In this document: piece after piece, positions 11,724-61,259 of the stretch
How the letters are laid out: each line of letters starts with the position of its first letter
How positions within the stretch are numbered: the stretch's first letter is position 1
DNA from: Octopus sinensis
Lineage: Eukaryota
DNA length: 64,000 nucleotides
NCBI RefSeq assembly: GCF_006345805.1
Contig: NC_043024.1
Coordinates: forward strand, 12,152,001 to 12,216,000
Direction: 5' to 3'
Position numbers and translations under genes: made by a program
The notes under the pieces: model-generated
Told to the model about the DNA's origin: nothing
The model's input: only the letters and a program-made list of their open reading frames with translations
The model's database searches: none

Positions 11724-11729
11724 GATATG

Positions 11730-27940: not shown

Positions 27941-28107
27941 TTAATAATTGACAAATGCTTGTGGAATCCTTTCTTCATTGTTGACAATCCTTTCACATTC
28001 CATAAAAAAATCATAAGTGATTCTGTCGCTGACAACAGAATCATTCTTGTAATCTTCATGATTTCTAACAAACTGCCTTGTCCATTGGGCTAATGTCATT
28101 ATCTTTC
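27941..28107 (-). CDS. GCLC: GCLC-like gene A, last exon 16 (KIMTLAQWTRQFVRNHEDYKNDSVVSDRITYDFFMECERIVNNEERIPQAFVNY*)
   Basis: Matches GCLC G.LMT.A.W.R.F...HPDYK.DSV; ttttatag acceptor; TAA at 27943-27941. Confidence 0.92.
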
Positions 28108-28548
28108 CTATAAAATAAATTGAAATAATAAATGGTTTATTATTTATTTTCTATGGAAATTCTTTGCTGCATTCGGTAACAATATCCTATCCCCATGATC
28201 TAAGGCACAAATAGGTAAAGCCTGATCTGTTTCTTTGCTTTATTTGTTTTAGTGGTAATAATTGTTTCAAAAGTCTTATTTAAAACTGAACTGTGGCAGA
28301 ATAGTTTAATGACAGGACAGGATCTGGAACGAATACTTCACACACATGCATATACACACATTATCCTTCATATTAGTCTGTAGTATATGGAGTGTGAAGA
28401 TTTACTAACAATAAGTGTTACTCGGTTAAAATACAGTTTAGCATTATATTTGATAATTGAAAAAGAAACTAGCATTATTGGAGGGTAAATGTTATATATT
28501 TAAGATAAAATTTGTTTAATATTGATGAAAACAAATGAATCGTCTCAC

Positions 28549-28666
28549 CTGCCGCTTTGTCTGAGATATATTTCAGGTATTGCATTATTTGTGGCCTTTT
28601 ACTGGCGTCATAGTCAAATTGATCAAGGTATTTGTGTATGAGAGGAATTAAACCAGGGAAATCATC
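28549..28666 (-). CDS. GCLC: GCLC-like gene A, exon 15 copy b (DDFPGLIPLIHKYLDQFDYDASKRPQIMQYLKYISDKAA)
   Basis: FPGLIP motif; intact AG/GT; 118 nt, phase 0-1; duplicate of 31062-31179. Confidence 0.65.
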
Positions 28667-28827
28667 CTGTTGATAATAGAATCAAAATAATTGCAAATAG
28701 TTTGAGTTTTCTGTCCCGTAGTTGTTTGAGATTGCCCGACTGGTTATAAAAGTTATTAATATTTTTGGTTGAAAGGACAATTACAAAAATACACAGAGAA
28801 ATGGAAAGAATATTAACATAGGTGCAA

Positions 28828-29245
28828 ACATGGCTGTGTGGTAAGAAACTTGCTTCCCAACCACACTGTTCTGGGTTCAGCTTCACTGTGTGGCACCTTG
28901 AGCAAGTGTCTTCTACTACAGCCTCAGGACAATCATAGCCTTTGAGTGGATTTGGTTGATGGAAACATAAAGAAGCCCATCATGTGTGTGTGTGTGTTTG
29001 TATGTACGTATGTATGTATGTATGTATTTACATGTGTGTCTGTATTTTTCCCCACCACCACTGCTTGACAACTGATGGTGGTTTGTTTATGTCCCCATGA
29101 CTTAGCAGTTCAGCAAAACAGACCTATAGAATAAGTACTAGGCTTACAAAGAATAAGTCCTGAGGTCGACTTCCTCAACTAAAAATCCCTTTAAGGCTGT
29201 GCTCCAGCATGGCTCCAGTCAAATGACTGAAATGTGTAAAAGAAT
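28828..29245 (+). mobile_element. tRNA-derived SINE-like composite (head, (TG)n, second module); similar at 31435-31850, 43440-43820 and many partial copies
   Basis: Head tggctgtgtggtaag..ggttcag..ggcaccttgagcaagtgtctt; tail ..ctccagcatggc..agtcaaatgactgaaac. Confidence 0.75.
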
Positions 29246-31061
29246 AGAATATTCCCTTTTACATTAAAAATACTTCATCTGTATGTTCATATGGTGTAAT
29301 GCTGCATTCATGTACAAACATATGGACCATGCACAGTGGACCATCTACAAACAAAACTACACATAATTACTCAAATTATGCAGAACATATGCAGAACACT
29401 ACAGAACACTATGCAGCCAATAAGGCAGTCAAATTTCCCCCTGCACCATCATCAATACTCATCAAAACAATCAGTAATCTCCTCTTCATGTTTTTAAAAA
29501 ATAGTTGCTTCATCTAGATCAGTGGTTCTCAACCAGAATCCAAATAGCATTTAGGGGTCTACATGGCCCTTGTGGGTCCATGTAAGATTCCGTTGTACAA
29601 GAAATGAAATTGATTATTATTCTATAATACACAAAATATTTTAGCAATTTCCGTTATGCAATTCCTAATAATATTTAATTATAAAAATATAATAGGATAT
29701 TTTTAAACATCAAATGGTTACGAGGGTCCAGTTGAGCAAAATAAAGGATCAAAAGGGGATCCATGGGCAGAAAATGGTTGGGAACCATTGATCTAGATTA
29801 TACTTGTTTACTGATTTCACCTTTTTTCTGCTCACTCACACATACATCTCATCACATACACATTTCATGCGCATCGACATGCATGCATTCACAAACATTT
29901 AGCAGAAAGATGGTACCAAGCAAACACACAATTGTTACAATGCACATGTATCTTTGATCTTTTACCTGTTTCAGTCATTAGACTGCAGCCATGCTGGGGC
30001 ACTACCTTGAAGAATGTTTAGTCAAATGAATGGAATGGATCGACCCCAGTACATTTAAAAAAAAAGTTTTGTACTTATTCTATCAATCTCTTTTGTCAAA
30101 CTGTTAAGTTATGATGATGTAAACACACCAACACCATATATATATGACGGGGTTCTTTCAGTTTCCATCTACCAAATCCATGCACAAGGACATGGTTGGC
30201 CCAAGGCTATAGTAGAAGACATTCGCTACTCAGTGAAACTGAGCCTGGAAACATGTGGTTGAAAAACAAGCTTTTTACCATTCAAATTTACTGTGATATA
30301 GAAGACACCAGCCAACTTCAGCTGCTTTTGTCCAGAAGCTCAGAAATAATTGAATTGGTTCACCGTACCAACTCATAGGAAGAGACAACACTGACCCACA
30401 GACTACACTGCATTGACTCACAGACATAAAAGCACTGCACTATGTACAAGTCACTCAGACATTTGGCAGCACATAACTGACTTACATACATAAGTGTGTT
30501 CTCCAGTCTACAGATTGTTTTTTTCCTAATACTTTTGAATTGTACTTTGACCTGTATTCAACCGTTATTCTAGTTTCTCCTGTGTATACATACACACACA
30601 CACACACACATGCTAGTGCTGAAAAGTTCTTCGCTTAAAGAATATTGCAAAAGGCTTGGTTGATGGCCCAACCTTTCGAGCTCTTTAACAGGGCTTAGAC
30701 TATATGAAGGACCGCTGCCAATAAGTGTGTGAATCTGAGAGGGGAATATTTCGAATAAAATAATTTACTGATCCACCTGTATTTTCTTTTACCAAAAACC
30801 AGAAAGTCTTCAGCATTATCTCATATACATACATCATACATGGATGCATGAGTATGTATGTATATACATACTTTATTACTCGTGACTACTGTACTTTACA
30901 GAAAATCTCTAGAAACATTCACGTTGACAAATTATTGGATTCAAACTTTGGCACAATTATATTTGATAATTAGAAAAGAAACTAGCATTATTGGAGGGTA
31001 AATGTTGTATATTTAAGATAAAATTTGTTTAATATTGATGAAAACAAATGAATCGTCTCAC

Positions 31062-31179
31062 CTGCTGCTTTGTCTGAGATATATTTCAGGTATTGCATTA
31101 TTTGTAGCCTTTTACTGGCGTCATAATCAAATTGATTAAGGTATTTGTGTATGAGAGGAATTAAACCAGGGAAATCATC
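31062..31179 (-). CDS. GCLC: GCLC-like gene A, exon 15 copy a (DDFPGLIPLIHKYLNQFDYDASKRLQIMQYLKYISDKAA)
   Basis: FPGLIP motif; caacag acceptor, gtgaga donor; 118 nt, phase 0-1. Confidence 0.8.
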
Positions 31180-31591
31180 CTGTTGATAATAGAATCAAAA
31201 TAATTGCAAATAGCAAGAATTGGCAAGAAAAACCCTTACCAATTCCTATTTGATATCTATCCCTTTCAACAAAGCATGAGTTTTAGAAGTGATATCAACA
31301 CTTTCTGTCATTTATATTCTTTTAGAATCTAAAATGTGTTAGTGGGCCATTTTGCTTAATGGTAGATTACTCAGTCGGTATCTGAGGGGGTACAGGTTCA
31401 ACTTCTATAGCTGTCTGCTGGCAACTTTTATAGGTGCAGGCATGGCTGTGAGGTAAGAATCTTGCTTCTCAACCACATGGTTCCAGGTTCAGTCCCACTG
31501 AATAGCACTTTGGGCAATCTTCTTCTATTATAACCTCGGCCAACCAAAGATTTGTGAGGGGATTTGGTTGATGGAAACTGAAAGAAGCCCG

Positions 31592-31641
<50 letters not shown>

Positions 31642-32095: not shown

Positions 32096-32166
32096 CTTTC
32101 CATTCATGATTTCATCTAAAGTCATCAAAGTGTAAATATCATCTGTTAGTTCACAATTAGCAAATT
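32096..32166 (-). CDS. GCLC: GCLC-like gene A, exon 14 (EFANCELTDDIYTLMTLDEIMNGK)
   Basis: YTLM..D.I.NGK motif; 71 nt, phase 1-0. Confidence 0.9.
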
Positions 32167-33087: not shown

Positions 33088-33131
<44 letters not shown>

Positions 33132-33487: not shown

Positions 33488-36400
33488 TCATCATCATTGT
33501 TTAACGTCAGTTCTCCATGCTAGCATGGGTTATATGCATCATCATCATCATCATCATCATCATCATTTAGCGTCCGTTCTCCATGCTAGCATGGGTTGGA
33601 CGGTTCAACTGGGGTCTGTGAAGCTGGAAGGCTTCATCAGGCCCAGTCAGATCTGGCAGTGTTTCTACGGCTGGATGCCCTTCCTAACGCCAACCACTCC
33701 GTGAGTGTAGTGGGTGCTTTTTACGTGCCACCCGCACAGGTGCCAGACAGAGCTGGCAAACGGCCACAAACGGATGGTGCATTTTATGTGCCACCGGCAC
33801 GAGGGCCAGGCGAGGCTGGCAACGGACACAAACGGATGGTGCTTTTACGTGCCACCAACACGGGGGCCAGACAGAGCTGGCAAACGGCCACGAAACGGAT
33901 GGTGCTTTTACGTGTCACCGGCACGGGGGCCAGGCGAGGCTGGCAACGGGCACGAACGGATGGTGCTTTTACATGTCACCGACATGGGGGCCAGACAGGG
34001 CTGGCAAACGGCCACGAACGGATGGTGCTTTTACGTGTCACCGGCACAGGGGCCAGGCGAGGCTGGCAACGGACACGAACGGATGGTGCTTTTACATGTC
34101 ACCGACATGGGGGCCAGACAGGGCTGGCAAACGGCCACGAACGGATGGTGCTTTTACGTGTCACCGGCACGGGGGCCAGACAGAGCTGGCAAACGGCCAC
34201 AAACGGATGGTACTTTTACGTGTCACCGGCATGGGGGCCAGGCCAGGCTGGCAACGAACACGAACGGATGGTGCTTTTACGTGCCACCTACACGGGGGCC
34301 AGACAGGGCTGGCGAACGGCTACGAACGGATGGTACTTTTACGTGTCACCTGCACGGGGGCCCTGATGTTGATCGACCTCAATTTGGTTTGATCTTGATT
34401 TTGACTGTTCTCACTGGTCTTGCCGGGTTTTCTCACGCACAGCATACCTCCAAAGGTCTCGGTCACTGGTCATTTCCTTGGTGAGACCTAAAGTTCGAAG
34501 GTCGTGCTTCACCGCCTCGGCCCAGGTTTTCCTGGGTCTACCTCTTCCACAGGTCCCCTCAACTGCCAGGGTGTGGCACTTTCGCACACAACTATCTTCA
34601 GCCATTCTCATCACATGACCATACCAGCGCATACGTCTCTCTTGCACACAACAACTGATACTTCTTAGGTTCAACTTTTCTCTCAAGGTACTTACACTCT
34701 GTCGATTATGAACACTATGTTACACATCCATCGGAGCATACTAGCTTCATTTCTTGCGAGCTTACGCAAATCCTCAGCAGTCACAGCCCAAGTTTCACTA
34801 CCATGTAGCATGGCTGTACGTACACATGCATCATACAGTCTGCCTTTTACTTTGAGCGAGAGGCCTTTTGTCACCAGCAGAGGTAAGAGCTCTCTAAACT
34901 TTGCCCAGGCTATTCTTACTCTAGCAGTTATACTCTCAGCGCACCCGCCCCCGCTACTGACTTGGTCACCTAGGTAACGGAAACTATCAACTACTTCTAG
35001 CTTTTCTCCCTGGAAAGTGACGGAAGTTGGTCTCAGAGCATCTTCAGTGTTAATTGTTCCTGAGCATCTGCCACATACAAAAACCATCTTCCTAGTTAGC
35101 CTTCCTTTGACATTGCTGCACCTCTTATGTGTCCATAGCTTACACTTGGTGCATCTTATAGAGTTTCTACCTACACCTTTTCTACAGATCGAGCAGGGCC
35201 ATCTACCTGAAGGCGTTTGTGATTGGTCTACCTTCCTACTTATTAGGACTTTGGTTTTGGCTAGGTTGATTCTAAGGCCCTTCGATTCTAAACCTTGTTT
35301 CCATACCTGAAACTTCTCCTCTAGTTCTGATAGAGACTCAGCAATTAGAGCAAGGTCATCAGCATAGAGGAGCTCCCAGGGGCATCCTGTCTTGAATTCC
35401 TCCGTTATTGCCTGGAGGACTATGATAAATAGGAGGGGGCTGAGGACTGAACCTTGGTGGACCCCAATCTCTACCCTGAATTCTTCACTGTACTCGGTGC
35501 CAACCCTCACCTTACTAGCAGCGTCTCTGTACATGGCTTGTACAGCTTTCACTAACCATTCATCTATCCCTAGTTTCCTCATTGACCACCAGATGAGGGA
35601 TCGGGGGACCCTGTCGAAGGCTTTCTCCATATCAACAAAAGCCAGGTATAGGGGCTTGTCTTTGGCTAGGTATTTCTCTTGCAGCTGTCTTACCATGAAA
35701 ATAGCATCAGTAGTACTTTTCCCTGGCACGAACCCAAACTGCATCTGATCTAGGCTAACTCTCTCTCTAATTGGTTGGGCTATAACCCTCTCCGTAACCT
35801 TCATTACCTGATCCAGCAGCTTGATACCCCTGTAGCTATTTGTATCTAGGGCGTCACCTTTACCTTTGTAGCAGCTGACTATTATGCTGCTACACCAGTC
35901 ATTGGGAATGACTCCTTCGTGTATCACCTGGTTAACTATACGGGTGACTAGGCTATAGCCGACACTACCAGATATTTTGAGCATCTCTGCAGTAATTCCT
36001 GATGGGCCTGGGGCTTTCCCTGTTTTCATGCTTTTAATTGCCTTATCTACTAAGGAACTGTCAACTCGGATTGCTGGTCCCTCTGTTGGGTCAACATTCG
36101 GCAGAGACTCTCTTTATCCCATTCATTTTCCTCATTCAGCAACCTTTCATAGTGGCTTCTCCAAACCTCTCTCTTTGCATCCTCATTTAGCGCAAGTGAG
36201 CCGTCATCCGTGCGAACACATTTTTCTCCTACCACGTCACGATTCTCTCTCACACACTGTCTTGCTATACGAAATACCTCAAGTCTTTCATCCTCACGGC
36301 GCAGGACATTGGCAAATTTTTTTCCTATCTGCTTCCCCTCTGGCTAAATAAACCTGCCTCCTAGCTTCCCTTCTTGCAGTCTGATACACTTCCCTGCTAC

Positions 36401-37230
36401 CACCGTTCTTCCAGTCCTTCCAAGCCTGTTTCTTTTGTCTAATAGCTCTGTCAACAGTATTGTTCCACCACCACGTTATTTTGGGTCTTGTGGGGACTTT
36501 GCACCAGCCACAGATCTGGTCAGTGGCTTTCAGCAGGTTGTCCCTTAGAAGCGCCCAGTTATCTTCTACCCCATGTGTAGCTATGCCCCCTTCTATTTCG
36601 TCGAAGGCTTCAAGTAACATGTCTCTAAATCTCTGTCCATTAGCAGGATCTTTAAGCTTCCAGACCCTTCTTCTCCATGTTGGTCGTCTTCTAGTCGTCC
36701 TCTTAGTCCTGATCCTAAAGTCACTGACTACCATTCTATGTTGTGGGGTACATTCTTCGCCTGGGAAGGTTTTGGCATTCATAAGCAGCCATCTTTCCCT
36801 TTTTCTGGCAAGGATGTAGTCGATTTGGCTAGTATGCTGGCCCGAACGGTAGGTGACCAGGTGGCTTGTTGGTTTCCTGAAGTTAGTGTTGCAAACCATA
36901 AGACTATTCGCATCACAGAACTCCAGCAGCCTGGTTCCCTCCTCATTGCGAGAACCATAACCATAGCCTCCATGAACGCCATAGAAGCCCTCAGCATATA
37001 GTCCAACATGCCCATTGAAGTCACCAGCCACAAAGAGAAGGTCCCTGTTGTTCGTCAATGAGGTGGTCTGCAGTAGGGTGTCATAGAAACGGTCTTTCTG
37101 TCCATCGGGTAACCCTGGCTGAGGGGCATAGGCCGATATAATAGTTGCTAAACTATGATGGAGCACTAATCTAATCTTCAATATTCTGTCACATACTCTG
37201 ACTACCTCGATAACTTTATCTACCCATATA
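33488..37230 (-). mobile_element. Young 5'-truncated RTE-clade LINE (partial APE, full RT), few frameshifts, inserted into a SINE composite in intron 13
   Basis: ORFs 36294-37283 (AYAPQ, GDFNGHVG, QIDYIL), 34692-36029 (RT with LLYADDL), 34411-34686; (ATG)n tail at 33488-33566. Confidence 0.95.
33700..34365 (-). repeat. About 11 tandem ~61-bp units in the RTE 3' UTR, alternating subtypes
   Basis: ggatggtgcttttacgtg recurs about every 61 bp; alternates ccagacagagctggc / ccaggcgaggctggc. Confidence 0.92.
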
Positions 37231-37445
37231 TGTATTTGTGTATCTGTCCCCCCCCCCCGCCACCATCGTTTGACAACCAACATTGGTGTGTTTACATCTC
37301 CATAAATTAGCAGTTCAGCAAAATAGACAAATAGATTAAGTACTAGGCTTACAAAGAATAAGTCCTGCGGTCAATTTGTTTGACTAAAGGCAGTGCTCCA
37401 GCATGGTTGCAGTCAAATGACTGAAACAAGTAAAAGAATAAATGA

Positions 37446-37477
<32 letters not shown>

Positions 37478-38262: not shown

Positions 38263-38344
38263 CTTTTTGGACATCTTTTCTGAAGTGAAACTTTTCTTTA
38301 TTAATGGCATCCCGCTTTTGTGCTGATGTGAAGTTTTCATCAAC
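38263..38344 (-). CDS. GCLC: GCLC-like gene A, exon 13 (VDENFTSAQKRDAINKEKFHFRKDVQK)
   Basis: VDENM..AQKRDA....F.FRKD motif; 82 nt, phase 0-1. Confidence 0.93.
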
Positions 38345-41597: not shown

Positions 41598-41702
41598 CTT
41601 TGTTATTGGGATCAAAAGGTTTAGCTTGAGAGTAATTATAGCTCGGTTAAGAAGAATAAGGAATACAACAAGAGCAGCATTTTCAAAGTCAGTCAACTGA
41701 TC
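41598..41702 (-). CDS. GCLC: GCLC-like gene A, exon 12 (DQLTDFENAALVVFLILLNRAIITLKLNLLIPITK)
   Basis: QLTDFEN.A.VVF..LL.R motif; 105 nt, phase 0-0. Confidence 0.95.
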
Positions 41703-42962: not shown

Positions 42963-43049
42963 CTCCATTGTTCTGAATTCCACTTTCCATCCAGATTTCT
43001 CATCAGGGAGCTTCAATTTTAAGCTGTGTCCATTACTATTAAAGATAGC
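42963..43049 (-). CDS. GCLC: GCLC-like gene A, exon 11 (AIFNSNGHSLKLKLPDEKSGWKVEFRTME)
   Basis: GW.VEFR.ME catalytic motif; ccttttag acceptor; 87 nt, phase 0-0. Confidence 0.93.
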
Positions 43050-47293: not shown

Positions 47294-47406
47294 CTGAATA
47301 TGACCAGAATCTTTGAAAATGTCTTGATCAATTTTCTCTTTGCGTAAAATGAGTGGGTCTTTAAGAAGGAGGTGTGCGACATATTTGGCGATTATTTCAT
47401 CAATAC
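47294..47406 (-). CDS. GCLC: GCLC-like gene A, exon 10 (GIDEIIAKYVAHLLLKDPLILRKEKIDQDIFKDSGHIQ)
   Basis: GID...A..VAHL...DP motif; 113 nt, phase 1-0. Confidence 0.93.
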
Positions 47407-49399: not shown

Positions 49400-49538
49400 C
49401 TTCAGCCTTCAGTAATTCATACTGCCTATGGTCATAACGGTAATCATAGTCATTATAGAATTGGTTGTCCACAGAAATGTATCTTCCTATTGAATCAAAA
49501 CCAGTTTTGTCCACCAAAACTTTGCCTTCTGTCAAAGG
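49400..49538 (-). CDS. GCLC: GCLC-like gene A, exon 9 (PLTEGKVLVDKTGFDSIGRYISVDNQFYNDYDYRYDHRQYELLKAE)
   Basis: Aligns to PL......KSRYDSI..Y.S....YND; strong polypyrimidine acceptor; 139 nt, phase 0-1. Confidence 0.92.
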
Positions 49539-50610: not shown

Positions 50611-50727
50611 TTCTATTCCCCGTTCTTGTCTGGTACGATCATCACAAGACCAAGACATGGGTCTCCAAGCGGAATCAAATTCAGATAAAAGTCCTCGATA
50701 AATCGGTGATCCAGCTGTCAGTGCTGT
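50611..50727 (-). CDS. GCLC: GCLC-like gene A, exon 8 (TALTAGSPIYRGLLSEFDSAWRPMSWSCDDRTRQERGIE)
   Basis: ALTA.SP.YRG and DDRT..ERG motifs; 117 nt, phase 0-0. Confidence 0.95.
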
Positions 50728-51376: not shown

Positions 51377-51594
51377 CATAATCGGAGTAAGAGGCACAAA
51401 ATTGTCAAAGAGATAAGCAGCTTCTTTCAGACCAGCAGCTTGAAATGTAACTTGTATAACACAGCAACTGACTCCGAATGATTTAGTATCCATGTAAATG
51501 TGGCCTGGTTTCAATGCTTTCATCATCTCTTCATTGTCTTCATACTCAGACAAATCCTCTCCGTATGGCATCATCGTATTTTTGTCTATATAAA
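51377..51594 (-). CDS. GCLC: GCLC-like gene A, exon 7 (YIDKNT...KPGHIYMDTKSFGVSCCVIQVTFQA...PLTPIM)
   Basis: KP.HIYMD and QVTFQA motifs; 218 nt, phase 1-0. Confidence 0.95.
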
Positions 51595-52437
51595 CTGAAA
51601 CAAGAATTTTATAATCATGCAAACTTGGCTCAAATTCGGTTATTAATCAGTAAAAGGCAGAGTCAAATTGATTGATAATCAGTCAAAAACCAAATGCAAT
51701 TAAACAGTACTGGATGAAGAACTCTCGTGTATTTTGACAACACTTACAAAGAAAGGATAATGCACAGGAAATTACAAGTTTCTACATAAGTTAGCTTCCC
51801 TTCTTTGTGTATCCTTTACCTCATTCGATACTACAAAACAACATTTAAAACCTTGTAGTATCTTGTATATTATCATGTAATCTTATCCACCATGGAAATG
51901 GATTACCAGCATTTTCATGTGGGATGATCGAAAATGTGAGTTGGGGGGGGGGCATACAATCAAGACTAGACTGTGTAAGGGATGAAATATATCAAGGTTG
52001 ATGACCCAAATAAGTCTCTTCATTAGTTCAACATAAGTTAGGCTCTTCTTAAAACAGTCACTGACAGGGTTATGACGTCAGAAGCCAATAAGTATTTCCA
52101 ACTAACAAAAAAATTCCAATTTATATCACAAAATATTTGAATGACGTCCTAATCACGTTGACATATCTCTACAACTGCTTTTATATTAGGAAGCTCAACA
52201 GAGCACACTCAGCCAAATCATGTAAGCATTGATAATCTACAAATAAACTATATATATATATACATATATACAATACATATAATGGAGAAATTGTACAAAA
52301 TGTATAAATGGATGATGAGTAAAGCACTGGCACAGTTTTGATTCCCTGTTGTTATCCGTAGATTTACTGCAGGAACTTCGAAGTGGCAGTTGGGGTAACA
52401 GTATTAATAAAATAAGAGCTGGAATAGACTTTATTGG

Positions 52438-52480
52438 GTACAACACATGTTTCAACCCGTTCCGGGTCTCTTCATGTATT
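52438..52480 (-). ncRNA. Degenerate hammerhead motif (core ATGAAGA)
   Basis: TAC-ATGAAGA-GACCCG-GAA-CGGGTT-GAAAC-ATGT-GTT-GTA; first core C mutated. Confidence 0.5.
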
Positions 52481-53044
52481 CAGTAAAAAGTCTCACCAGA
52501 GATTTTTTGAGTCGGCTAATGTAACGCTCTATGCCCATCAAATTCGAGAATATGTATATATAAGATGAATTGGGATTAAAAAATCCTGGCAGATATCAAG
52601 TAAGCACTCAGTAAAAAGGAATAAGTATAAATTTCCAAAAAGTAGTTAAAGTAAATGTATGTAGAATACAAATCTCAGGTAAATCCTCATTTATGACAGG
52701 TAAATCCAATAATCCTTTTGCAGAATTTTAAAAAATTCAGATATTAACAACAATCAATGATTTGTACGAAGAAAATCCTGTCTTTAATTTATATATATGG
52801 TGGTTGTTTACTCCTTATACAGAGTCTGACCCCCCTCGTGTACTTACACCTTAGATCCATCATGGCATCTGATATGGTTTCTTAAAACAGACAATGTATT
52901 GAAAAGACATCCACACAGATTGCACATCTGATTTGGACCACCAAGAGCTGCAGCTAAGTTCTGGTCTTTGTGGATCTTAGAATGTTTTTTTGCAACACGC
53001 ATCTGTTAGATTTCCAGACCTTATGGCACACATGGCATTGAAAG

Positions 53045-53077
<33 letters not shown>

Positions 53078-53559
53078 ATATACATACACACGCACACAAC
53101 AGGCTTCTTTCATAAGGCTTTGGTCAACCCAAGGCTGTAGTAGAAGACATTTGCCCAAGGTGCCACACAGTGGGATTGAACCCAGAACCATGTAGTTGGG
53201 AAGCAAGCTTCTTACAACACAAACACACATGCACTTATGTGATATAGCTTTTATCTTCAATCTTTTGTTTCACTTGATAGACAGCAACCATGCTGGGCAC
53301 CTGGAAGTATTTTTAGTCAAAAGGATTGACCCTAGTACTGAATTTTTTTTTATATGGACCCAGAATCTTGTGGTTGGAAACAAGCTGTCTACCACACACC
53401 CACGCCTGTGCCTTGAAGCCAATATTAAAGTTGAGTTGAAGGCAGCAAGTATGAAGAATTGTTAGCACAGCAGGCAAAATACTTAGCAGCAGTTTGTCCA
53501 TCTTTACTTACCACTTTGTTTATTAGAAAGATAATGTATTTTATGCTTAGTATACTTAC

Positions 53560-53618
53560 GCGGTACATTGATTACCATTCTTTCTTGTCTTCTTTTAGCT
53601 AAATTTTTATACGAGGTT
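53560..53618 (-). CDS. GCLC: GCLC-like gene A, exon 6 (TSYKNLAKRRQERMVINVP)
   Basis: RR...V.INVP motif; 59 nt, phase 2-1. Confidence 0.92.
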
Positions 53619-54943
53619 CTTGATAAAACAAAAAAAAAAAGGAAAGAAGAAAGGAAGTAAATAAAAAAATAAATAAAACATTGAATATATCAAACATTAA
53701 CAATTATGAAAATTGGTCTTAATTAAGTCAGCAAGCTGGGGGAATCGTTAGCATGCTGGGTGAAATGCTTAGTGGCATTTTGTCCTTTCATCCTTTTGGG
53801 ATCAATGACATAAGTACCAGTTACGTACTGGGGTTGATGTAATTGATTAGCCCATCCCACCTCTCCCACAGTTTCAGGCCTTGTGCCTATAATAGGATGG
53901 ATTATTTTATTAGAAAGGATGATGAAGATAGTTGTTTCTTTTTAATCTCATTCGAATATCAAATCCTATTTGAAACTGACCCAGATTCTGTCATACAAAA
54001 TCTTCATCCTTAAGTATCCGGACCTATTAATCAAATATTTCTTCCAATTTGTGGCACTCAAGATGTTTGGAAGGTTCTTGTCATCGTTGGCAGCTTGTCT
54101 CACTGCAGTGTCAGGTGATGCCTGAGGGTGCTTCACTTTTCCAATGTCCAAGCCTCACCACCACCTGTTGTAATGCTGTGAGTGTGTCAGCTTGGTTTAA
54201 TAGGTTCCGTTTAACCTTGAAGTGTTTCAACAATTGAGACACTTGGTATTGAATTGATGTGGGGTTTTTTCCCCTCTTCTTCCATTTTTCTACCAGTTTG
54301 GAATTTATGTTTTCAAATGTGGTCTTGTATTATGTATGTATCATATGTGAAGGTGCATGATTTAGTGGTTAGAACATTCAGCTTACAATTATAGGGTTAT
54401 GAGGATTTTAATTCATAAACCAATAAATAATTTACCGTTTTGTTGCTAGTGCATTTGAGTCCAATATATTACTGGTATTTTATTTTATCAGTGACAGAAG
54501 GATCGGCAGCAAAGTTAATCATTGTCATTTATTATAAGTTCATTCACATCTACAATGCTTTGGGGTCAAATTGATTGGTACTTTATTATAACAACACAAA
54601 TATGTGATTGGTCTTTTGTAATACTGATCCCAGTACTTGAATGGTACTTTATTACCTTGACCTCAAAAAGATGACAAAGTTGATCCCAATGAGATTTGAA
54701 CTCGGAACATAAAAGGACATAGTGCAACAATCGATATCTTACAGAGGCACAATGCCACACATTTTAAGTGGGTAATAAAGTATAATGGATTATATTGAAA
54801 CCCACCCCCTAATTGACTGGTACTTTATTTAATTGACCCTCAAAAGATGACAAAGTCAACGTCTTCAAGATTTGGATTATCAAGCAACATAGGAATAACA
54901 CAGAATAACACAAGAAGATGTGCAAAAATGTTTTATGACTCAC

Positions 54944-55060
54944 ATATAGTATGGAGTCTGGGAGCACAGTGCTGCATCTCCTATGAAAACTGATTGGTGA
55001 AGTTCGACTGGATGCTTGTTTGCTTTGTAAGATGGAAAAGTGAAATTAGGACAGCCGAAT
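54944..55060 (-). CDS. GCLC: GCLC-like gene A, exon 5 (FGCPNFTFPSYKANKHPVELHQSVFIGDAALCSQTPYY)
   Basis: GCP.FT.P motif; ttttttcag acceptor, gtgagt donor; 117 nt, phase 2-2. Confidence 0.92.
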
Positions 55061-55558
55061 CTGAAAAAAGAAAATTTTTAATTAATTATCATTATTATTT
55101 GTATTGAGTGAGAAAGCAATGCATGCCATCAAAGTGACACTGGGACACAAATATGCAAAGCCTAATATACCCATCTGATAAGGGTACACCAGGCACATGC
55201 CTCACAGCCATACGTGCGTGACACAGTGATTTCATATCAAGTTAAACAGTGCAGGTTTAACTTGATATGGAGGTGGGTTCCAGTTAGAATTTTCTTCAGG
55301 TTAAGTAGTCAATCCTGCATCGAGACATCGTGCATTTAAGAAAGAAACTACACCTTATATAACAAAAGTCTTTCTGATTTGTTGTGTTCCTTTGTGTTAA
55401 CAGAACTTTTCCCATTGTTGTATTACAACATTTTCCTTCCATCGCACTGATGTTATTGAATTAAGTTTGTTTTGTGAAAAGAGCTTCTCAGGGTACATCC
55501 ATGTTGTCATTTAGCCTGAAGCTATTTTTATTATTATTATTATTATCATTATGATTAT

Positions 55559-55595
<37 letters not shown>

Positions 55596-55805
55596 TGTTG
55601 TTGGCATTGAGCTGGCAGAATCGTTAGTGCCCTGGATGAAATGCTTAGTGGTATTTCACCTGTCAATACATTCTGAGTTCAAATTCCGTCAACGTCAATT
55701 TTGTCTTTCATCTTTTCAGGGTCGATAAGATAAATACCAGTTGAACACTGTAATTGATTTATCCCCTTTCCCAAGATTACTGCCCTTGTGGCAAAATTTG
55801 AAACT

Positions 55806-56761
55806 GTGATGGCCAGATAAGATGTTCAAGTTCACTAGAATGTTCCTCGTACCATTCAGTAAAGCTTTAGCGGTGTGAATTGGTACATTATCATCCTGAA
55901 AGATTGTGTTTCCATCTAGAAACAGTTCTGTGAACATAGGATGAATTTGATCTGATAAAATACTTAAATAGTCTTGACTATTAATTCTGCCATGAAGGGA
56001 AACCATTGGGCCGGCAGATTTCCAAGATATAGCCTCCCACCCCCGATCATCACAGATCCTGCTCTATGTTTAACAGTGGGAAGAAGGCAGTCTGGGTCAA
56101 AAGCTTCTTTTGGCTGTCTCCACGCGCATACTTCGCTGGAGGTCGGAAATAAGGTAAAGGATGACTCATCCGAGAAAATAACATTCTTCCACTGCTCTAA
56201 GGACCAATTCTGTAGGGGTTTTTTTTCCACTCTAAATGCTTTGCGACTTTTATTTTTGAAAGTATTGATTTTCTGATTGCAGCTCCTAGCGAACAGTTTT
56301 TATGGAAACTGTGTTCTCTAGATGGTCATTAAGCTCTGCAATAATTTTGAGAGCTGTACTTTTGTGATCCTTTCTAACAATTCATGTAAAAGCCCGATGG
56401 TCCCTATCGAAAAGTTTTGGTTTTCTTCTGGAGTTTTGTTTCGACAAGGAAGTTTTTCCCTCTTTCTCAAAGGCTGTCATTACTTTTGAGACAGTACTTC
56501 TTGAAACACCAACCATTTTGTCTGTTTTCGTTACGCTAGCACCTGCCAATTTCATCTCCTTGAAAGTCCGATAGAGGTGTCATTTTAATGAATTTTAATT
56601 ACCTATTTCTGAGGATATCTGAAAAGAAACAGCAATTTTAGCAAAACATATTAAGCGACGCTATTAATAAATCAAAAAAAAAAAACTAACAAACTTTTGA
56701 CAGTTTTATAGATATTTCAGAATTATGATGCTAGGTGTTTCCATTATTTTGTCCAACCCTG
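55806..56761 (-). mobile_element. Tc1-like transposon, 5' TIR present, 3' end lost next to a SINE
   Basis: WKNVIFSDESSF, PTVKH..GSVM, IFQDDN.PIHT; TIR (ta)cagggttggacaaaataatggaaacacc. Confidence 0.85.
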
Positions 56762-57115
56762 TATATTCATTCACAAAAATGTTTTATAAAAATACATACA
56801 TTTATTTTCCCATAAAAATATAAAGCTGTATTTACTCAGAAACAAACTCTACGTAAATACGAGTGGTAATAAAACGTTTCTGGCTTTACAAAAGGCCTAG
56901 CTGGAGACCCAATATTCCGAGTTCTTTTAAAGGGCTTGGAAAAACTGAAGGGCTGCTGCAATAAGCATGTGAATCTGAGAGGGGAATATGTTGAATAACA
57001 TCATAATTAACTGATCCTCCTCTATTTTCTTTTACCCAAAACCAGGAACTTTCAGCACCCCCTCGTATCTACATAAAATAACATACATAAATATTAGCTT
57101 CAAGATTTCACTTAC

Positions 57116-57181
57116 CTTGGAAAATATGGCACACTAACTAGAGTTTGGTTTGGGCTGAGAAGTTGTTTAATTGCTTTACGT
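57116..57181 (-). CDS. GCLC: GCLC-like gene A, exon 4 (RKAIKQLLSPNQTLVSVPYFPR)
   Basis: Aligns to RR......L..N......FPR; 66 nt, phase 2-2. Confidence 0.9.
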
Positions 57182-58542
57182 CTAAAATATTAACAAGATA
57201 GATTCTTGATGAGTCATGGAACAAAACAGATTTCATACATATTGTACTTAAAAAGTAACAACAACAAAAACAACGATGTTTGGAAAATATTTAATATTTT
57301 GAGGTTGGTTTTGTGAAGGCAGAAGGCTTAATGGTTAGGGTATTCAGCTCATTATTGTAAGGTTGTGCATTGTGTCTTTGAGCAAGGCACTTTGCTTTAT
57401 TGCATTGTTTCAGTATACTCAGCTGGCAAAAATGAGTTGCACATGTACTTTAAAAGGCCAGCAATGTCGTATTTTGTGTTAAGCTGAATTTCTCTGAGAA
57501 CTATATTAAGGGTACATGTGTCTGTGGAGTAGTTCAGCTATTTGCATGGTATTTTCGTGAGCAGGCTGTTGTTCTGCTGATCGGATCAACTGGAATAACT
57601 GCCAGTTTTGTGTGGTTGTTTTGCTTTGTCTCTTTCTTTTTCTATCCTGTGATGTCCATTTAAAAGCGGTTTTAGAACAGCAGTGGTCTGTTAGCCAGAA
57701 TATGTGATCTGCTAGTTTTAACCTTTGTTCTTTGATAATCTATAATGATTTTGTAGTCTTGTGGTGGCTCTCTTGAGGCCAATATCACATGACCATACAT
57801 ATGACAGCCCATAAATGGTGATGGCTTGGTCAATCGATCCAAAACAGTTATCCTCTTCTGCCTCCAACACATTGTTTCTCATGGAAGTAGATGTGGCTGA
57901 CAAAACCGATATAAGATAGACTGATCCTGTGGCACTGAGGGCCCTGAAATTGACCCTGAACAACAACTGCAGGGGGTTGATTGCAATATCTCCTCTCTTT
58001 ATGCAGTTTCACACGTCCAGATTCAAAGCACTCTACTTCAGCGTCACACATGTATCTCAATGCCTTCTGGTTATCACCCATAACAATTTTTCTTGAAACA
58101 AATTTTTAACAGCTTGATGGCCATCCTGTCACCAACCCTCACCTGTATCGAAGCAGGATAATACTTACCCATAGCCAAACATGTTTTTCATGGAAGATTT
58201 CAAATGGGAAGTGTCGCTTGTATGACAATGATGCTTGTTTACAACCGTCCCATGATGTTGAGACAAGGACACATACACACACATAAATAAGTCATCACCA
58301 GAAATACAGAGAAAGTGATTTGTCTCTTAGGAACCAATAACCAACAACGATGTTATTGCTTATGCAATATACAATGTGAAAAATAGTTCTGCAAGCCTGG
58401 CTGTGTAGCAAGAAGTTCATTTCACAATCCTATGATCTTCAGATCAATCCCACTGCATGGCACCTTGGTCTTCTCTTAAAGCCAGAGGTGAACCATTATC
58501 TTTTGAGTGGATTTGGTAGACAGAAACTGAAAGAAGCCCATT

Positions 58543-58577
<35 letters not shown>

Positions 58578-59117
58578 ACTTGGGGTTGCTGAAAAATGAC
58601 TGTCTTTAAGAATATCACAAAAGCCTGGTTGGAGGCCCAACCTTCTGAGTTCTTTTGTGGGGCTAGGAAAACTGAAAGACCTCTGCAATAAGCATCTGAA
58701 TCCCAGAGAGGAAGATGTTGAATAAAATCATAATTCACTGATCCACCTGTATTTTCTTTCATCCCAAACCAGGAACTTTCCAACGCTCCTCATACGTGTG
58801 TGTGTGTATATGTGTACACACGTGGTATTGTCTTCTTGCCTTGACTTCATGCGACAATTGTAAACAAATATCACTGACATACAGGAGGTGTCCTTTGTTT
58901 CCAGTCCTTCATGAAAACACGTCTGTTCATGAGGAATATTGCCTTGCTTGGAAGTTGATGTCAACAAGTGAAGTTGATGACAAGAAGGGCATCAGATCAT
59001 AGAAAATCCACCTCGGTGTTTCCGTCCAACCCATGCAAGCATGGAAAAGTGGATGTTAAATCAATGTCAATGATGATGATGAAATGTAAATAAAGTACAT
59101 GAAAATATTTTGCTTAC

Positions 59118-59225
59118 CTTTCTTTAAAATGTTCTTCGGTAAGGTTCAAATCTGTGATGGAACTGCCAAATGGGTTTTTTGGTATGCCTTCCAGAATATA
59201 TTCGAGACATTCTGGAACCCATTCG
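59118..59225 (-). CDS. GCLC: GCLC-like gene A, exon 3 (EWVPECLEYILEGIPKNPFGSSITDLNLTEEHFKER)
   Basis: W.PE...Y..EG.P motif; 26/36 identical to gene B exon 3; 108 nt. Confidence 0.92.
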
Positions 59226-61024
59226 CTTTTAATGTATTGTTTTTAAAAAGATAAATTATATTTATCAAGTTAGAAAGCATATAATTTTAAGAATTAATTA
59301 TAGATTTTTTCCAGTTGTTTTTGTTTTGAGTATGATGAAAGAATGTTTAAATTGCAATTTTATATAATTACTAGTAGAGATACTCAGCATTGCTCGGGAT
59401 TAAAATGGCATAGTTTGTATATATATCAGTTATTATATATAGTTTGTATATATATATATGAGTTATGTTGAAACTGGTGATACGGGAAAGTGCAACATTG
59501 ACAACAAAATATTTTGGGAGTAAATGATGGTCTAATTTGACTAAGCGACAAGCAGTAAGTCCCTTTGGAGGATTTCAGGCCTTAACCTATCATGGAAAAC
59601 TGGGAGTAGTGCGGTATGTAATTTTTGAACCCACCAAAAAGTTGTCAGTAGATATACTTGCAAATTTCTTTATAATCATAATCTATGCCGTTTGAAAGGG
59701 ATTTGTATAAATTGTCATTAAAAGACACCCATTTTCCTGAAAGTTATGAGGGGAGAAAGGTTACATCATGTAAATTTTCCGAAACACTTCTCTCCACCCC
59801 CTCGTAAAAATTATTTCCCATCAATCCCTGTATACTCTGAAACCACAACATCTAAGCGGTATTTGTAGAAAATTTTGTTAAAAAGTATCCATTTTTCTGT
59901 ATGAGACAACAAAGTTGGGAGCGTATACATCTGTAGTAAGGCCCTTTTATTTATAAAATTTTTCATTTCATGTTCATTTCATTCATTGTTTGCAATGTTC
60001 TCTCTTCTCGTCTGTCTGTCTGCCTGTCTCTCTCTCTCTCTATCTCTCTCTCTCTCTCACTCACACACACACTCTGCAAAGCTTACAGATGGACTGCTGA
60101 ATTGAAATCTCTATGCTGCTTTGAGGGGAAGGTAAAACTTGATAAACTGCCTCTCCTTCTGTTGTTAGACTACCGTGATGTTTGTTTAAAAAAAAAATTA
60201 TGACTGTGATAAAATAATGAAAGCAGTATTTACTAAGCAAGTGAACACTATTTTACAAAGAAATGATTAGACATAAAATATAAAAATTATTAGAATTGAG
60301 AATCAAATGTGAAAATATTATCAAGGGGATAGCAGAAAACCACCCAGAGGCTGTCTTTCTGCCAGTATAGATAATGAAAATTAATTCTAAAATATATGAT
60401 AATTTCATTCTTGCTGTGTTTCTTTATCACACACACACACACACACACATACACACACAGAATTCTGTCAGTTATGGCAATGAGGGTTCCAGTTGAGCCA
60501 ATCAATTCAAGAGCCAGCTCATGAAATTAACATGCAAGTGGCTGAGTCGATCACAGAAAGTGACAAAGCTGGTCCCTTAAAATATGAATACTACTCAAGC
60601 TTCTATATCACTGGAAGAAAGGGATCCAAACCAAAGAGATTAAACCGAAAATGGTGTAATTGTTCAACCCATGCTCTTGCTTTGATAAATTACAGAAACT
60701 GTCGCATATAAAACAGAGGCTTTCCGTTGGTGCACAAGGCCAGCAATGTTGAGGGAGTGGATTAGTTGATATTGTTGAATCCAGGAATTGACTAGATAAA
60801 TATTTTATTGATCCAAGAGGGACAAAAGGCAAATTTACCATGGAGAGATTTGAACTCACAATGTAACGCTTAGTATAGTATATATAACTATGTGACTAAA
60901 TCAACCACTAAGATGGCATTCAATGTTGAAATCCCTCTAAACATTAAAATCAATGAGTTGAGACAGAAAAGAGAAACAGGTTCCAGTGATGTGAACCAAA
61001 CTACGCATCTGTCTCTTGCCTTCT

Positions 61025-61072
<48 letters not shown>

Positions 61073-61152
61073 AATTATTGTTTATAATAACTTCCATTCA
61101 TCATCAAGGATTAAAGGATTATTGAAAATCAAGTGCACATAATTATACTCAC

Positions 61153-61259
61153 CTTGATTCTAATCCCTTTACTTCAGGAGATTCAAGTAAGGACATGGAA
61201 TTCAACAATAACTGGACAACTTTTTGATCATGGTCAAATTGTATTAATGAAAACTCAAT
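61153..61259 (-). CDS. GCLC: GCLC-like gene A, exon 2 (IEFSLIQFDHDQKVVQLLLNSMSLLESPEVKGLES); exon 1 not found in window
   Basis: 21/35 identical to gene B exon 2; same 107-nt size and phase. Confidence 0.9.

What the first reader, a model, noticed from the sequence alone, without database searches (positions are those of the whole stretch)
27941..61259. GCLC paralogue with intact Mg/ATP machinery but a rebuilt substrate pocket: candidate new amide-bond ligase
Seen: 15 exons splice into one uninterrupted frame (1674 nt). Retained: IE(F), PE..EY..E, Q of IQVTFQ, DDRT, K of L.K.P, VEFR, with conservative R>K at two nucleotide-site positions. Replaced: DxRW>DSAW (exon 8), KSRY>KTGF (exon 9), STNWQ>NSNGH (exon 11), GMGxCCLQ>GVSCCVIQ (exon 7), HPRF>TPYY (exon 5), PEY>PEC (exon 3). 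Known (yeast Gsh1 numbering from memory, to be verified): E52/E96/E103/Q268/E470 bind Mg, R472 is catalytic, R313 and Y362 hold the glutamate alpha-carboxylate, and Y97/F197/M262/C266/W445 line the substrate pockets. Inference: losing both alpha-carboxylate ligands while keeping metal ligands suggests an acyl donor lacking that group (e.g. GABA- or beta-alanine-like) or a bulkier one, joined to a non-cysteine amine, i.e. a non-glutathione small-peptide pathway. A pseudo-enzyme or structural role is the alternative.
Basis: partly seen in the sequence, partly recalled or inferred. Interest (0 to 1): 0.92.

Follow-up and report, generated by a model that had tools for sequence, protein, structure and literature searches.

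The report
Divergent octopus glutamate-cysteine ligase paralogue
This is an intact, selectively maintained, octopus-only extra copy of the glutathione-pathway enzyme GCLC that keeps all its magnesium/ATP chemistry but has lost the residues that hold glutamate and cysteine, so it probably joins other, still unknown molecules; it is one member of an undescribed octopod gene family.

Summary
On the minus strand, 15 GT-AG exons (61259..27941) splice into 1674 nt. They are exons 2-16 of Octopus sinensis XP_029652703.1 ("GCLC-like", 607 aa). Exon 1 lies about 800 nt beyond the window.

The gene belongs to an octopod-only family of at least 6 GCLC-derived paralogues on one chromosome. The true GCLC sits on another chromosome.

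Most of the "rebuilt" positions (R196, M262, C266, Y362F, R449K, R468K) are shared by the whole family, or vary in genuine GCLs. Only R313A, R361G and W445G are special to this gene. Those three residues are near-universal elsewhere.

All Mg, ATP and catalytic residues are kept. The gene is intact in three Octopus species and under purifying selection (dN/dS 0.21). It evolved about twice as fast as its sisters after duplication. The predicted fold matches yeast Gsh1 (TM 0.86).

Best reading: an active ATP-dependent carboxylate-amine ligase that no longer makes gamma-glutamylcysteine, with unknown substrates. A non-catalytic role is the main rival. Nothing was found in the literature. Expression and activity are untested.

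The parts
61153..61259 (-). Coding exon 2 (first exon inside the window). Starts IEFSLIQFDH and holds Mg/alpha-amine ligand E52 (codon 61256-61254).
   Evidence: AG acceptor, GTGAGT donor
59118..59225 (-). Exon 3: WVPECLEYILEG. Holds Mg ligands E96 (59212-59210) and E103 (59191-59189), and Y97C (59209-59207).
57116..57181 (-). Exon 4
54944..55060 (-). Exon 5: HPRF>TPYY, i.e. R196Y (54951-54949) and F197Y. R196 is lost in every paralogue of the family.
53560..53618 (-). Exon 6
51377..51594 (-). Exon 7: GVSCCVIQVTFQ. Holds M262V (51472-51470) and C266V (51460-51458); Q268 is retained (51454-51452).
50611..50727 (-). Exon 8: DSAW = R313A (50670-50668), specific to the gene A lineage. DDRT is retained.
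49400..49538 (-). Exon 9: KTGF = R361G (49502-49500, lineage-specific) and Y362F (49499-49497). A new Arg appears in 'IGRY' a few residues downstream.
47294..47406 (-). Exon 10
42963..43049 (-). Exon 11: NSNGH...LKLKLP...GWKVEFR. Holds W445G (43031-43029), Q446H, R449K and R468K. K451, E470 and R472 are retained (43013-42972).
41598..41702 (-). Exon 12
38263..38344 (-). Exon 13
32096..32166 (-). Exon 14
31062..31179 (-). Duplicate copy (15') of exon 15, differing by 2 aa. It lies in a 258-bp block (30956-31213) that is 97% identical to 28443-28700. RefSeq isoform X2 uses it and then reads into the intron to a stop. Including both copies would shift the frame (118 nt each).
   Evidence: also present in O. 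vulgaris but single-copy in O. bimaculoides
28549..28666 (-). Exon 15 (the copy used by isoform X1)
27941..28107 (-). Exon 16, ending ...PQAFVNY plus TAA stop
4233..9831 (-). First three coding exons of a second family member, 'gene B', 18 kb downstream of gene A: 9831-9679, 5445-~5339 and 4343-4233. It runs off the left edge of the window and keeps E50, E52, PEY and E103.

Best explanation
The gene encodes a full-length, correctly folded protein derived from GCLC. It arose by DNA-level duplication in the octopod lineage and belongs to a family of at least six paralogues on one chromosome.

Most likely it is still an ATP- and Mg-dependent carboxylate-amine ligase. It would work by the family's usual chemistry: a carboxylate is activated as an acyl-phosphate, which an amine then attacks. 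It no longer recognises L-glutamate through its alpha-carboxylate, nor L-cysteine, so it is not a gamma-glutamylcysteine synthetase.

The family as a whole first changed the acceptor (cysteine) pocket. This gene then went through a second burst of change that removed the donor's alpha-carboxylate clamp (R313A, R361G, Y362F) and opened the acceptor site further (W445G). After that it came under purifying selection.

Shown: gene structure, intactness, family membership, residue pattern, conservation across species, selection, and predicted fold.

Inferred: that it is catalytically active, that its substrates lack the alpha-carboxylates or are bulkier, and that it is expressed.
For: - Gene and fold: the 16-exon gene is intact and equals RefSeq XP_029652703.1. 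It matches Pfam GCS at E = 6.7e-124. The AF2 model has pLDDT 88 and pTM 0.91, and its best PDB match is yeast Gsh1 3ig5 (TM 0.86, E = 1e-47).
- Catalytic residues: D49, E50, E52, E96, E103, Q268, K451, E470 and R472 are all retained in gene A, and in every correctly modelled paralogue. Yet 59 of 184 canonical-invariant positions are changed. The chance of keeping 9 of 9 at that rate is 0.03.
- Substrate residues: 8 of 9 substrate-specific positions are changed against 0 of 9 catalytic ones (Fisher p = 4e-4; the residue sets were chosen post hoc).
- The three key losses: R313, R361 and W445 are invariant in 107 canonical GCLCs, and present in 143/147, 146/147 and 140/146 diverse representatives.
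- Conservation: the same DSAW/KTGF/NSNGH motifs occur in O. vulgaris and O. bimaculoides. All 13 exons observable in O. bimaculoides are intact.
- Selection: omega = 0.21 (bootstrap 0.12-0.35), p = 5e-8 against neutrality. This is similar to sister paralogue p4.
- Rate: relative-rate tests show gene A accumulated about 1.5-2.2 times more unique changes than its sisters, and it has the longest stem branch in the tree. That is a burst followed by constraint.
- Redundancy: a canonical GCLC with a normal pocket exists elsewhere in the genome.
Against: - There is no biochemical data and no direct expression evidence. No transcript-derived entry for this gene is in the protein collection. The RefSeq isoforms are predictions.
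- Retention of catalytic residues in this one gene is only modestly improbable by chance (p about 0.03), and the paralogues are not independent samples.
- R449K and R468K affect residues that are invariant in canonical enzymes. They could weaken nucleotide binding.
- Losing three arginines and a tryptophan might simply leave a non-functional cavity.
- Purifying selection is also expected for a structural or regulatory protein.
Confidence: 0.5

Rival explanations
1. Non-catalytic derivative (pseudoenzyme). The protein keeps the fold, and perhaps nucleotide/Mg binding, but no longer ligates anything. It would act as a regulatory or scaffolding partner, for example of its sister paralogues or of GCLM, or as an abundant structural protein, in the way cephalopod S- and Omega-crystallins derive from enzymes.
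For: - The substrate clamps are removed rather than swapped for obviously new polar ligands (R>A, R>G, W>G).
- R449K and R468K occur at otherwise invariant sites.
- Multi-copy, lineage-specific expansion resembles enzyme-to-crystallin recruitment (established knowledge; PMC4976375, listed).
- Purifying selection fits any folded, useful protein.
Against: - Every Mg, ATP and catalytic residue is retained in all paralogue lineages, despite 28 family-wide changes at otherwise invariant sites and a long stem branch.
- The changes are concentrated on substrate-specific residues, not on catalytic ones.
Confidence: 0.28
2. It is still a glutamate-cysteine ligase: a tissue-specific or stress-specific isozyme that makes gamma-glutamylcysteine with altered kinetics or regulation.
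For: - Same family, same fold, complete catalytic core.
- Databases name it GCLC-like.
- Y362, M262, C266 and Y97 do vary among family members presumed to be functional.
Against: - R313, R361 and W445 are invariant in all 107 canonical animal GCLCs and near-universal in 149 diverse representatives, and all three are lost here.
- R196 is lost as well.
- Y362 contacts the Glu alpha-carboxylate and W445 the cysteine moiety in the yeast structure (PMC5613772 table 3).
- From memory, unverified here: the T. brucei equivalent of R313 (R366) was reported to determine alpha-carboxylate recognition (Abbott et al. 2002).
- A canonical GCLC is present.
Confidence: 0.07
3. A decaying or unexpressed duplicate (young pseudogene) whose open frame survives by chance.
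For: - No expression data were obtainable.
- The O. bimaculoides gene models are incomplete.
- An internal exon duplication could disturb splicing.
Against: - The 1824-nt CDS is open in O. sinensis. All 15 of exons 2-16 are found at 99-100% identity in O. vulgaris, and 13 of 13 observable exons are intact in O. bimaculoides, with conserved splice sites and no indels.
- The 'missing' O. bimaculoides exons coincide with N-gaps.
- omega = 0.21, p = 5e-8.
- The lineage predates the O. sinensis/O. bimaculoides split.
Confidence: 0.03
4. Family-level idea: the paralogues are ATP-dependent gamma-glutamyl-amine synthetases, conjugating biogenic amines or polyamines. Gene A would be a derived member using a different acyl donor.
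For: - The sister paralogues keep R313 (and some keep Y362) but have lost the residues around the acceptor's carboxylate and side chain (R196, M262, C266).
- gamma-Glutamyl conjugation of monoamines and a 'gamma-glutamylhistamine synthetase' activity are described in gastropod molluscs (references cited in PMC4472778 and PMC6454038).
Against: - PMC6454038 states that gastropod monoamine catabolism differs from that of cephalopods.
- The clade is octopod-only, so it cannot be the gastropod enzyme.
- Gene A itself lacks the glutamate alpha-carboxylate ligands.
Confidence: 0.08

Closest known systems
Canonical animal GCLC / yeast Gsh1 (group-2 glutamate-cysteine ligase, EC 6.3.2.2, Pfam PF03074; PDB 3IG5/3IG8/3LVV/3LVW)
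   Same: - Homologous over the full length (43-50% identity to animal GCLCs, 29% to yeast).
- Same predicted fold (TM 0.86).
- Same 16-exon structure, with intron positions shared with octopus GCLC.
- Identical Mg ligands (E50, E52, E96, E103, E470), plus Q268, K451 and R472.
   Different: - Not the orthologue; it sits in an octopod-specific clade on a long branch.
- Lacks R196, M262, C266, R313, R361, Y362, W445 and Q446.
- Carries R449K and R468K.
- About 40 residues shorter at the C-terminus, and lacks an internal Cys-rich insert present in octopus GCLC.
Sister octopod GCLC-like paralogues (O. sinensis XP_029652730.2 and XP_036370512.1; O. vulgaris QHX41528.1; Argonauta hians GAB1605628.1, and others)
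   Same: - 56-73% identical, on the same chromosome, of the same length (~606 aa).
- Share 28 family-defining substitutions, including R196, M262, C266, T443 and R468K.
- Share the intact catalytic core.
   Different: - The sisters keep R313, R361 and (except one) W445.
- Gene A alone has R313A, R361G and W445G, plus G263S, T157P, L286F and R416K.
- Gene A evolved about twice as fast after the radiation.
Independent, uncharacterised GCLC-like paralogues in other taxa (Mytilus XP_076117635.1; the mites Oppiella nova and Halotydeus destructor; Apostichopus japonicus PIK50773.1; Amanita thiersii PFH51144.1)
   Same: Extra GCLC-family copies with non-canonical residues at M262, C266 or Y362 (or R313 in Amanita) and an intact E470/R472.
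   Different: - They have separate origins: about 35-42% identity to gene A, no closer to it than canonical GCLC is.
- None combines loss of R313, R361 and W445.
Other carboxylate-amine ligases of the GS/GCL fold (YbdK, plant and E. coli GCL, PafA/Dop, glutamine synthetase)
   Same: Shared fold, detected by Foldseek (ranks 2-20). From established knowledge, a shared acyl-phosphate mechanism. They show that this fold can accept very different donors and acceptors; PafA uses a protein's C-terminal glutamate and a protein lysine.
   Different: Only remote structural similarity (TM 0.35-0.44, about 10% identity). No specific relationship.

Membership tests
Group-2 glutamate-cysteine ligase catalytic subunit (GCLC/Gsh1) as a protein family | Full-length sequence homology / Pfam PF03074 GCS domain | tested here: met
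   PF03074 E = 6.7e-124. E = 1.3e-77 to 3IG5. 43-50% identity to animal GCLCs.
Group-2 glutamate-cysteine ligase catalytic subunit (GCLC/Gsh1) as a protein family | Gsh1-type three-dimensional fold | tested here: met
   AF2 pLDDT 88.1, pTM 0.91. Foldseek top hit 3ig5, TM 0.86, E = 1e-47. This is a predicted structure only.
Group-2 glutamate-cysteine ligase catalytic subunit (GCLC/Gsh1) as a protein family | Three-Mg site and nucleotide/catalytic residues (E50, E52, E96, E103, E470, Q268, K451, R472) | tested here: met
   All are identical in gene A. Roles are taken from PMC5613772 table 3.
Functional gamma-glutamylcysteine synthetase (EC 6.3.2.2) | Ligands of the L-glutamate alpha-carboxylate (R313 of DxRW; Y362 of KSRY) | tested here: not met
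   R313A and Y362F, plus neighbouring R361G. R313 and R361 are invariant in 107 canonical sequences, and present in 143/147 and 146/147 diverse representatives.
Functional gamma-glutamylcysteine synthetase (EC 6.3.2.2) | Cysteine-site residues (W445 H-bond to the Cys moiety; R196, M262 and C266 around the pocket) | tested here: not met
W445G, R196Y, M262V, C266V. The W445 contact is from PMC5613772.
Functional gamma-glutamylcysteine synthetase (EC 6.3.2.2) | Orthology to the single-copy animal GCLC | tested here: not met
   The canonical orthologue is XP_029635280.1, on a different chromosome. Gene A lies in a 100%-supported octopod-only clade.
Functional gamma-glutamylcysteine synthetase (EC 6.3.2.2) | Makes gamma-Glu-Cys; complements gsh1 deletion; is inhibited by BSO/GSH; binds GCLM | not testable with these tools
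   Requires biochemistry or genetics.
Pseudogene | Disrupted frame or splice sites; dN/dS near 1 | tested here: not met
   Intact in three species. omega = 0.21, p = 5e-8. The apparent exon losses in O. bimaculoides are N-gaps.
Pseudoenzyme | Loss of one or more residues essential for catalysis or cofactor binding | tested here: inconclusive
   The core catalytic and metal residues are all present. However, R449K and R468K have unknown consequences, and the substrate ligands are gone. Activity cannot be judged in silico.
Octopod GCLC-like paralogue family (defined here) | Falls in the clade and carries its 28 shared substitutions (e.g. R196 lost, M262 lost, C266 lost, T443S, R468K); located on the same chromosome | tested here: met

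The most novel reading that the evidence does not exclude
Gene A is an active ligase whose enlarged, less cationic pocket accepts a carboxylate that is not a free alpha-amino acid, such as GABA, a beta-alanine-like acid, or a Glu/Asp side chain embedded in a peptide or protein. It would join this to an amine lacking a carboxylate. The octopod family as a whole would then be a set of new ATP-dependent amide-forming enzymes, founding octopus-specific small-molecule or protein-modification chemistry. More generally, GCLC would have been recruited repeatedly for new ligase functions in invertebrates (mussels, mites, sea cucumber).
Probability: 0.15. Interest if true: 0.85.

Novelty: new variant of a known kind. 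Interest (0 to 1): 0.6.

Why it matters
GCLC is the rate-limiting enzyme of glutathione synthesis. In most animals studied it is regarded as a single-copy gene (my own knowledge).

Here, an animal lineage has expanded it into a family of at least six genes. These keep the ATP/Mg chemistry but have systematically rewritten the substrate pockets. One member has lost both substrates' recognition residues yet remains under purifying selection.

If these proteins are active, they point to unknown amide-linked metabolites or modifications in octopuses. They would also give a natural experiment on how specificity evolves in the glutamine-synthetase/GCL fold. If they are inactive, they would be a new case of enzyme recruitment in cephalopods, alongside the GST-derived and ALDH-derived crystallins.

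Practically, automated names such as "glutamate--cysteine ligase catalytic subunit(-like)" on these genes are likely to mislead studies that use them as redox or glutathione expression markers in octopus.

Tried and rejected
1. Exon 1 inside the window. Three-frame translation of 61260-64000 found nothing. The exon lies about 800 nt beyond the edge.

2. Apparent loss of exons 3 and 13 in O. bimaculoides, which would have removed E96 and E103. Rejected: the relevant introns contain N-runs of 1.7-5.6 kb.

3. Primary yeast Gsh1 structure papers (DOI 10.1074/jbc.M109.025114, PMC2781686, PMC2863196) are not held. A search for residue names found nothing. Roles were taken from the secondary table in PMC5613772.

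4. Literature on octopus or cephalopod GCLC paralogues. Four searches, including by accession number, found nothing relevant.

5. Expression evidence via exact-protein look-ups. Isoform X2 is not on record. The clusters contain no transcript-derived or Logan members for gene A. So expression remains untested.

6. omega for canonical GCLC. The O. sinensis locus is over 100 kb and its DNA was not returned. Amino-acid identity (96.3%) was used instead.

7. An HSP-based shortcut for codon alignments inflated dN (0.34 against 0.21). It was used only after end-trimming, and only for a like-for-like comparison with paralogue p4.

8. The pairwise HMMER alignment to yeast mis-registers KSRY against the downstream 'GRY'. 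Multiple alignment, and the equal 41-residue spacing from DDRT to YND in animal sequences, place KTGF opposite KSRY.

9. The gamma-glutamyl-amine synthetase idea was considered for the family. It was kept only as a weak lead, because the literature ties that chemistry to gastropods and contrasts cephalopods with them.

Full report
**1. What is in the window**

A protein-guided scan of the minus strand found GCLC-like coding segments from 61259 down to 27941. It also found the first exons of a second GCLC-like gene at 9831-4233. Enumerating in-frame donor/acceptor pairs gave a unique model of 15 exons, all AG...GT. Together they are 1674 nt with no internal stop, ending in TAA at 27943-27941.

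The frame begins IEFSLIQ with no start codon. The database search supplied the reason. The window is Octopus sinensis, and the RefSeq protein XP_029652703.1 ([quoted passage not shown], 607 aa) equals my 557 residues preceded by a 50-residue exon 1. Fetching the locus showed that the window is identical to CM016886.1. Exon 1 sits at window-equivalent 64946-64797, about 800 nt past the right edge. The gene therefore has 16 coding exons. Their intron positions coincide with those of canonical octopus GCLC, so it arose by DNA-level duplication and is not a retrocopy.

**2. The residue claims**

Contact roles could be checked only through a secondary source, because the primary structure papers are not held. 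PMC5613772 table 3 lists the following for the yeast enzyme:
- Mg1: E52, E96, E103.
- Mg2: E50, E470.
- Mg3: E50, E103.
- Y362-OH to the glutamate alpha-carboxylate.
- E52 to its amine.
- R472 to the gamma-carboxylate.
- E96 and W445 to the cysteine moiety.
- K451 to the ADP beta-phosphate.

The same paper says the Arg equivalent to R313 influences glutamate binding in the T. brucei enzyme.

I aligned gene A with 107 canonical GCLCs and the yeast sequence.
- Retained in gene A: D49, E50, E52, E96, E103, Q268, D311, W314, R324, T325, N444, K451, E470, R472.
- Changed in gene A: Y97C, R196Y, F197Y, M262V, C266V, R313A, S360T, R361G, Y362F, S442N, T443S, W445G, Q446H, R449K, R468K.

**3.

Gene A is not a lone paralogue. 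The search returned a set of Octopus and Argonauta proteins 56-73% identical to it. The canonical octopus GCLC (XP_029635280.1, 649 aa, about 50% identical) lies on a different chromosome, in a gene longer than 100 kb.

A neighbour-joining tree (601 columns, 200 bootstraps) shows the following:
- All these proteins form one clade with 100% support.
- The clade sits on a long stem (0.37) and is sister to octopus GCLC.
- Argonauta is basal within it.
- At least six Octopus lineages (A, p2, p3, p4, p5, p8) predate the O. sinensis/O. bimaculoides split.

In O. sinensis the members all lie on CM016886.1:
- p4 at 2.1 Mb.
- Gene A and gene B (18 kb apart, both in this window) at 12.2 Mb.
- p3 and p2 at 15.9-16.0 Mb.

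An exhaustive HMMER scan of 1.84 billion cluster representatives found a single representative for the whole clade. The next hit falls to 42% identity. So the family is octopod-restricted as far as public data show.

**4. Which changes are special to this gene**

I scored 190 columns that are at least 98% invariant in canonical GCLCs.
- 28 are changed in every paralogue. These include R196, R205, M262, C266, T443, R468, P452/P454 and the F437/N439/Q441 stretch.
- Only six are changed solely in the gene A lineage: T157P, G263S, L286F, R313A, R361G, R416K.
- W445G comes on top of these. One sister paralogue has T at that site.

Gene A is not more diverged overall than its sisters. It has 59 of 184 invariant columns changed, against 49-60 for the sisters.

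I then looked at 149 diverse representatives of the wider family.
- R313 is present in 143/147, R361 in 146/147 and W445 in 140/146 (otherwise Y, never G).
- Y362 is replaced by W, F or H in about a quarter of them.
- M262, C266, Y97 and F197 also vary.
- C266 is Ala in the bona fide Leishmania enzyme (PMC5613772).

The other replacements are inherited from the family ancestor or tolerated elsewhere.

**5. Is it a live gene?**

- O. vulgaris carries all 15 window exons at 99-100% identity.
- O. bimaculoides carries 13 of them with no indel, no stop and conserved AG/GT.
- The two exons not found in O. bimaculoides fall in introns interrupted by N-runs of 1.7-5.6 kb. They are assembly gaps, not losses. 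The same gaps explain the defective O. bimaculoides gene models.

Nei-Gojobori analysis over 492 codons gives dS 0.112, dN 0.024 and omega 0.21 (bootstrap 0.12-0.35). The deficit of non-synonymous changes is significant (p = 5e-8). None of the 27 amino-acid differences touches a catalytic or pocket-defining residue, apart from S245C next to the pocket.

A like-for-like, cruder estimate gives 0.28 for gene A and 0.19 for sister paralogue p4, with overlapping intervals. Protein identity between the species is:
- 94.5% for gene A.
- 91-93% for the sisters.
- 96% for canonical GCLC.

Tajima relative-rate tests show gene A accumulated 51-78 unique changes against 32-46 in its sisters. This is significant in six of eight comparisons, and agrees with its long stem in the tree. 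The pattern is an early burst followed by constraint.

**6. Fold**

AlphaFold2, run with a 50-sequence alignment, gives pLDDT 88 and pTM 0.91. Foldseek places yeast Gsh1 first (TM 0.86, E = 1e-47). The other GCL, YbdK, PafA and glutamine-synthetase folds follow far behind. Pfam GCS matches at E = 6.7e-124.

**7. Interpretation**

The asymmetry is the key fact. All nine metal, nucleotide and catalytic residues survive. Eight of nine substrate-specific residues are replaced (Fisher p = 4e-4, with the caveat that the sets were chosen after seeing the data). Keeping 9 of 9 by chance at the gene's background rate has p of about 0.03. The same core is also kept in every correctly modelled sister, and in gene B.

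Together with purifying selection, this favours a protein that still performs Mg/ATP-dependent carboxylate activation, but on different substrates.

Three arginines (R196, R313, R361) and a tryptophan are replaced by Tyr, Ala, Gly and Gly. That predicts a larger, less cationic pocket. Such a pocket is consistent with a donor and an acceptor that lack alpha-carboxylates, or with bulkier substrates. This step is inference.

A non-catalytic role cannot be excluded in silico, and it is the main rival. Continued gamma-glutamylcysteine synthesis, or pseudogene status, are both unlikely.

I found no paper that mentions these genes.

**8. Wider pattern**

Several high-scoring representatives with non-canonical pockets turned out to be independent "GCLC-like" extra copies. 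They occur in:
- Mytilus.
- Two mites.
- A sea cucumber.
- Amanita, where R313 is C.

Divergent GCLC paralogues therefore recur across invertebrates. They appear uncharacterised as far as the sources searched here show. The octopod family is the largest example seen here, and gene A the most extreme member.

**9. Verdict**

The gene is a new variant of a known enzyme kind. It is already annotated automatically, but not studied. Interest is moderate to high. It depends on biochemical and expression tests that could not be run here.

Noticed in passing
window 4233-9831 (-): A second family member, 'gene B', lies 18 kb downstream of gene A. Its exons 1-3 (9831-9679, 5445-~5339, 4343-4233) encode MVFLTDGTLMTWEE..., IEYTMLQFDHEKRIVQ... 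and WSPEYTEYMIEGKPRNPFG.... The rest runs off the left edge. None of the retrieved proteins is a close match (best 86% over exon 1, to p3), so it may be unannotated in O. sinensis.
   Followed up: partly
window 30956-31213 vs 28443-28700 (-): A 258-bp duplication (97% identical) contains the penultimate coding exon and its splice sites, next to SINE-like repeats. RefSeq isoform X2 uses the upstream copy and terminates in the intron, which would remove the last 55 residues. The duplication is shared with O. vulgaris but absent from O. bimaculoides. Using both copies would shift the frame.
   Followed up: partly
window 34692-37283 (-), inside intron 13: A non-LTR retrotransposon lies in the same orientation as the gene. 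It has two long open frames: an endonuclease (PF14529, 329 aa) and a reverse transcriptase (PF00078, 445 aa, with a weak PHD-like hit). A degenerate copy lies at about 44.5-45.7 kb on the + strand.
   Followed up: partly
window 33713-34362: A G+C-rich tandem array (62-nt unit, about 10.5 copies; higher-order periods of 123 and 185) lies directly 3' of the retrotransposon on the minus strand. It produces spurious 256-aa ORFs.
   Followed up: no
window 16277-18874; 11668-12281: In the spacer between gene A and gene B there are two near-perfect long-period tandem repeats: 482 nt x 2.1 copies (99% matches) and 487 nt x 3.1 copies (98% matches). There is also a 614-nt (TA)n tract.
   Followed up: no
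window 49487-49479 (-), residues 332-334 of the protein: Gene A and its O. bimaculoides orthologue have 'IGRY' where canonical GCLCs have 'IDSY' and the sisters have 'SSY' or 'CSY'. A new arginine thus appears five to six residues after the lost R361/Y362. It might partly replace the lost positive charge. It also caused HMMER to mis-register the pairwise yeast alignment.
   Followed up: no
L001 (O. bimaculoides CM046630.1), locus coordinates 11991-17239 and 49934-55508: N-gaps in the O. bimaculoides assembly hide exons 3 and 13 of the orthologue. The deposited models (XP_052834018.1, XP_014788601.1) therefore skip E96/E103 and read through an intron. They should not be taken as evidence of decay.
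   Followed up: yes
proteins P0138, P0140, P0142, P0145, P0201 (not in the window): Independent GCLC-like extra copies with altered pocket residues exist in Mytilus, the mites Oppiella and Halotydeus, the sea cucumber Apostichopus, and the fungus Amanita thiersii (R313C). This suggests recurrent divergence of GCLC duplicates.
   Followed up: partly
L007 (O. bimaculoides canonical GCLC locus), 53944-58512 (-): A collagen/C1q-domain gene (435 aa) is nested on the opposite strand inside an intron of canonical GCLC, in both O. bimaculoides and O. sinensis.
   Followed up: no
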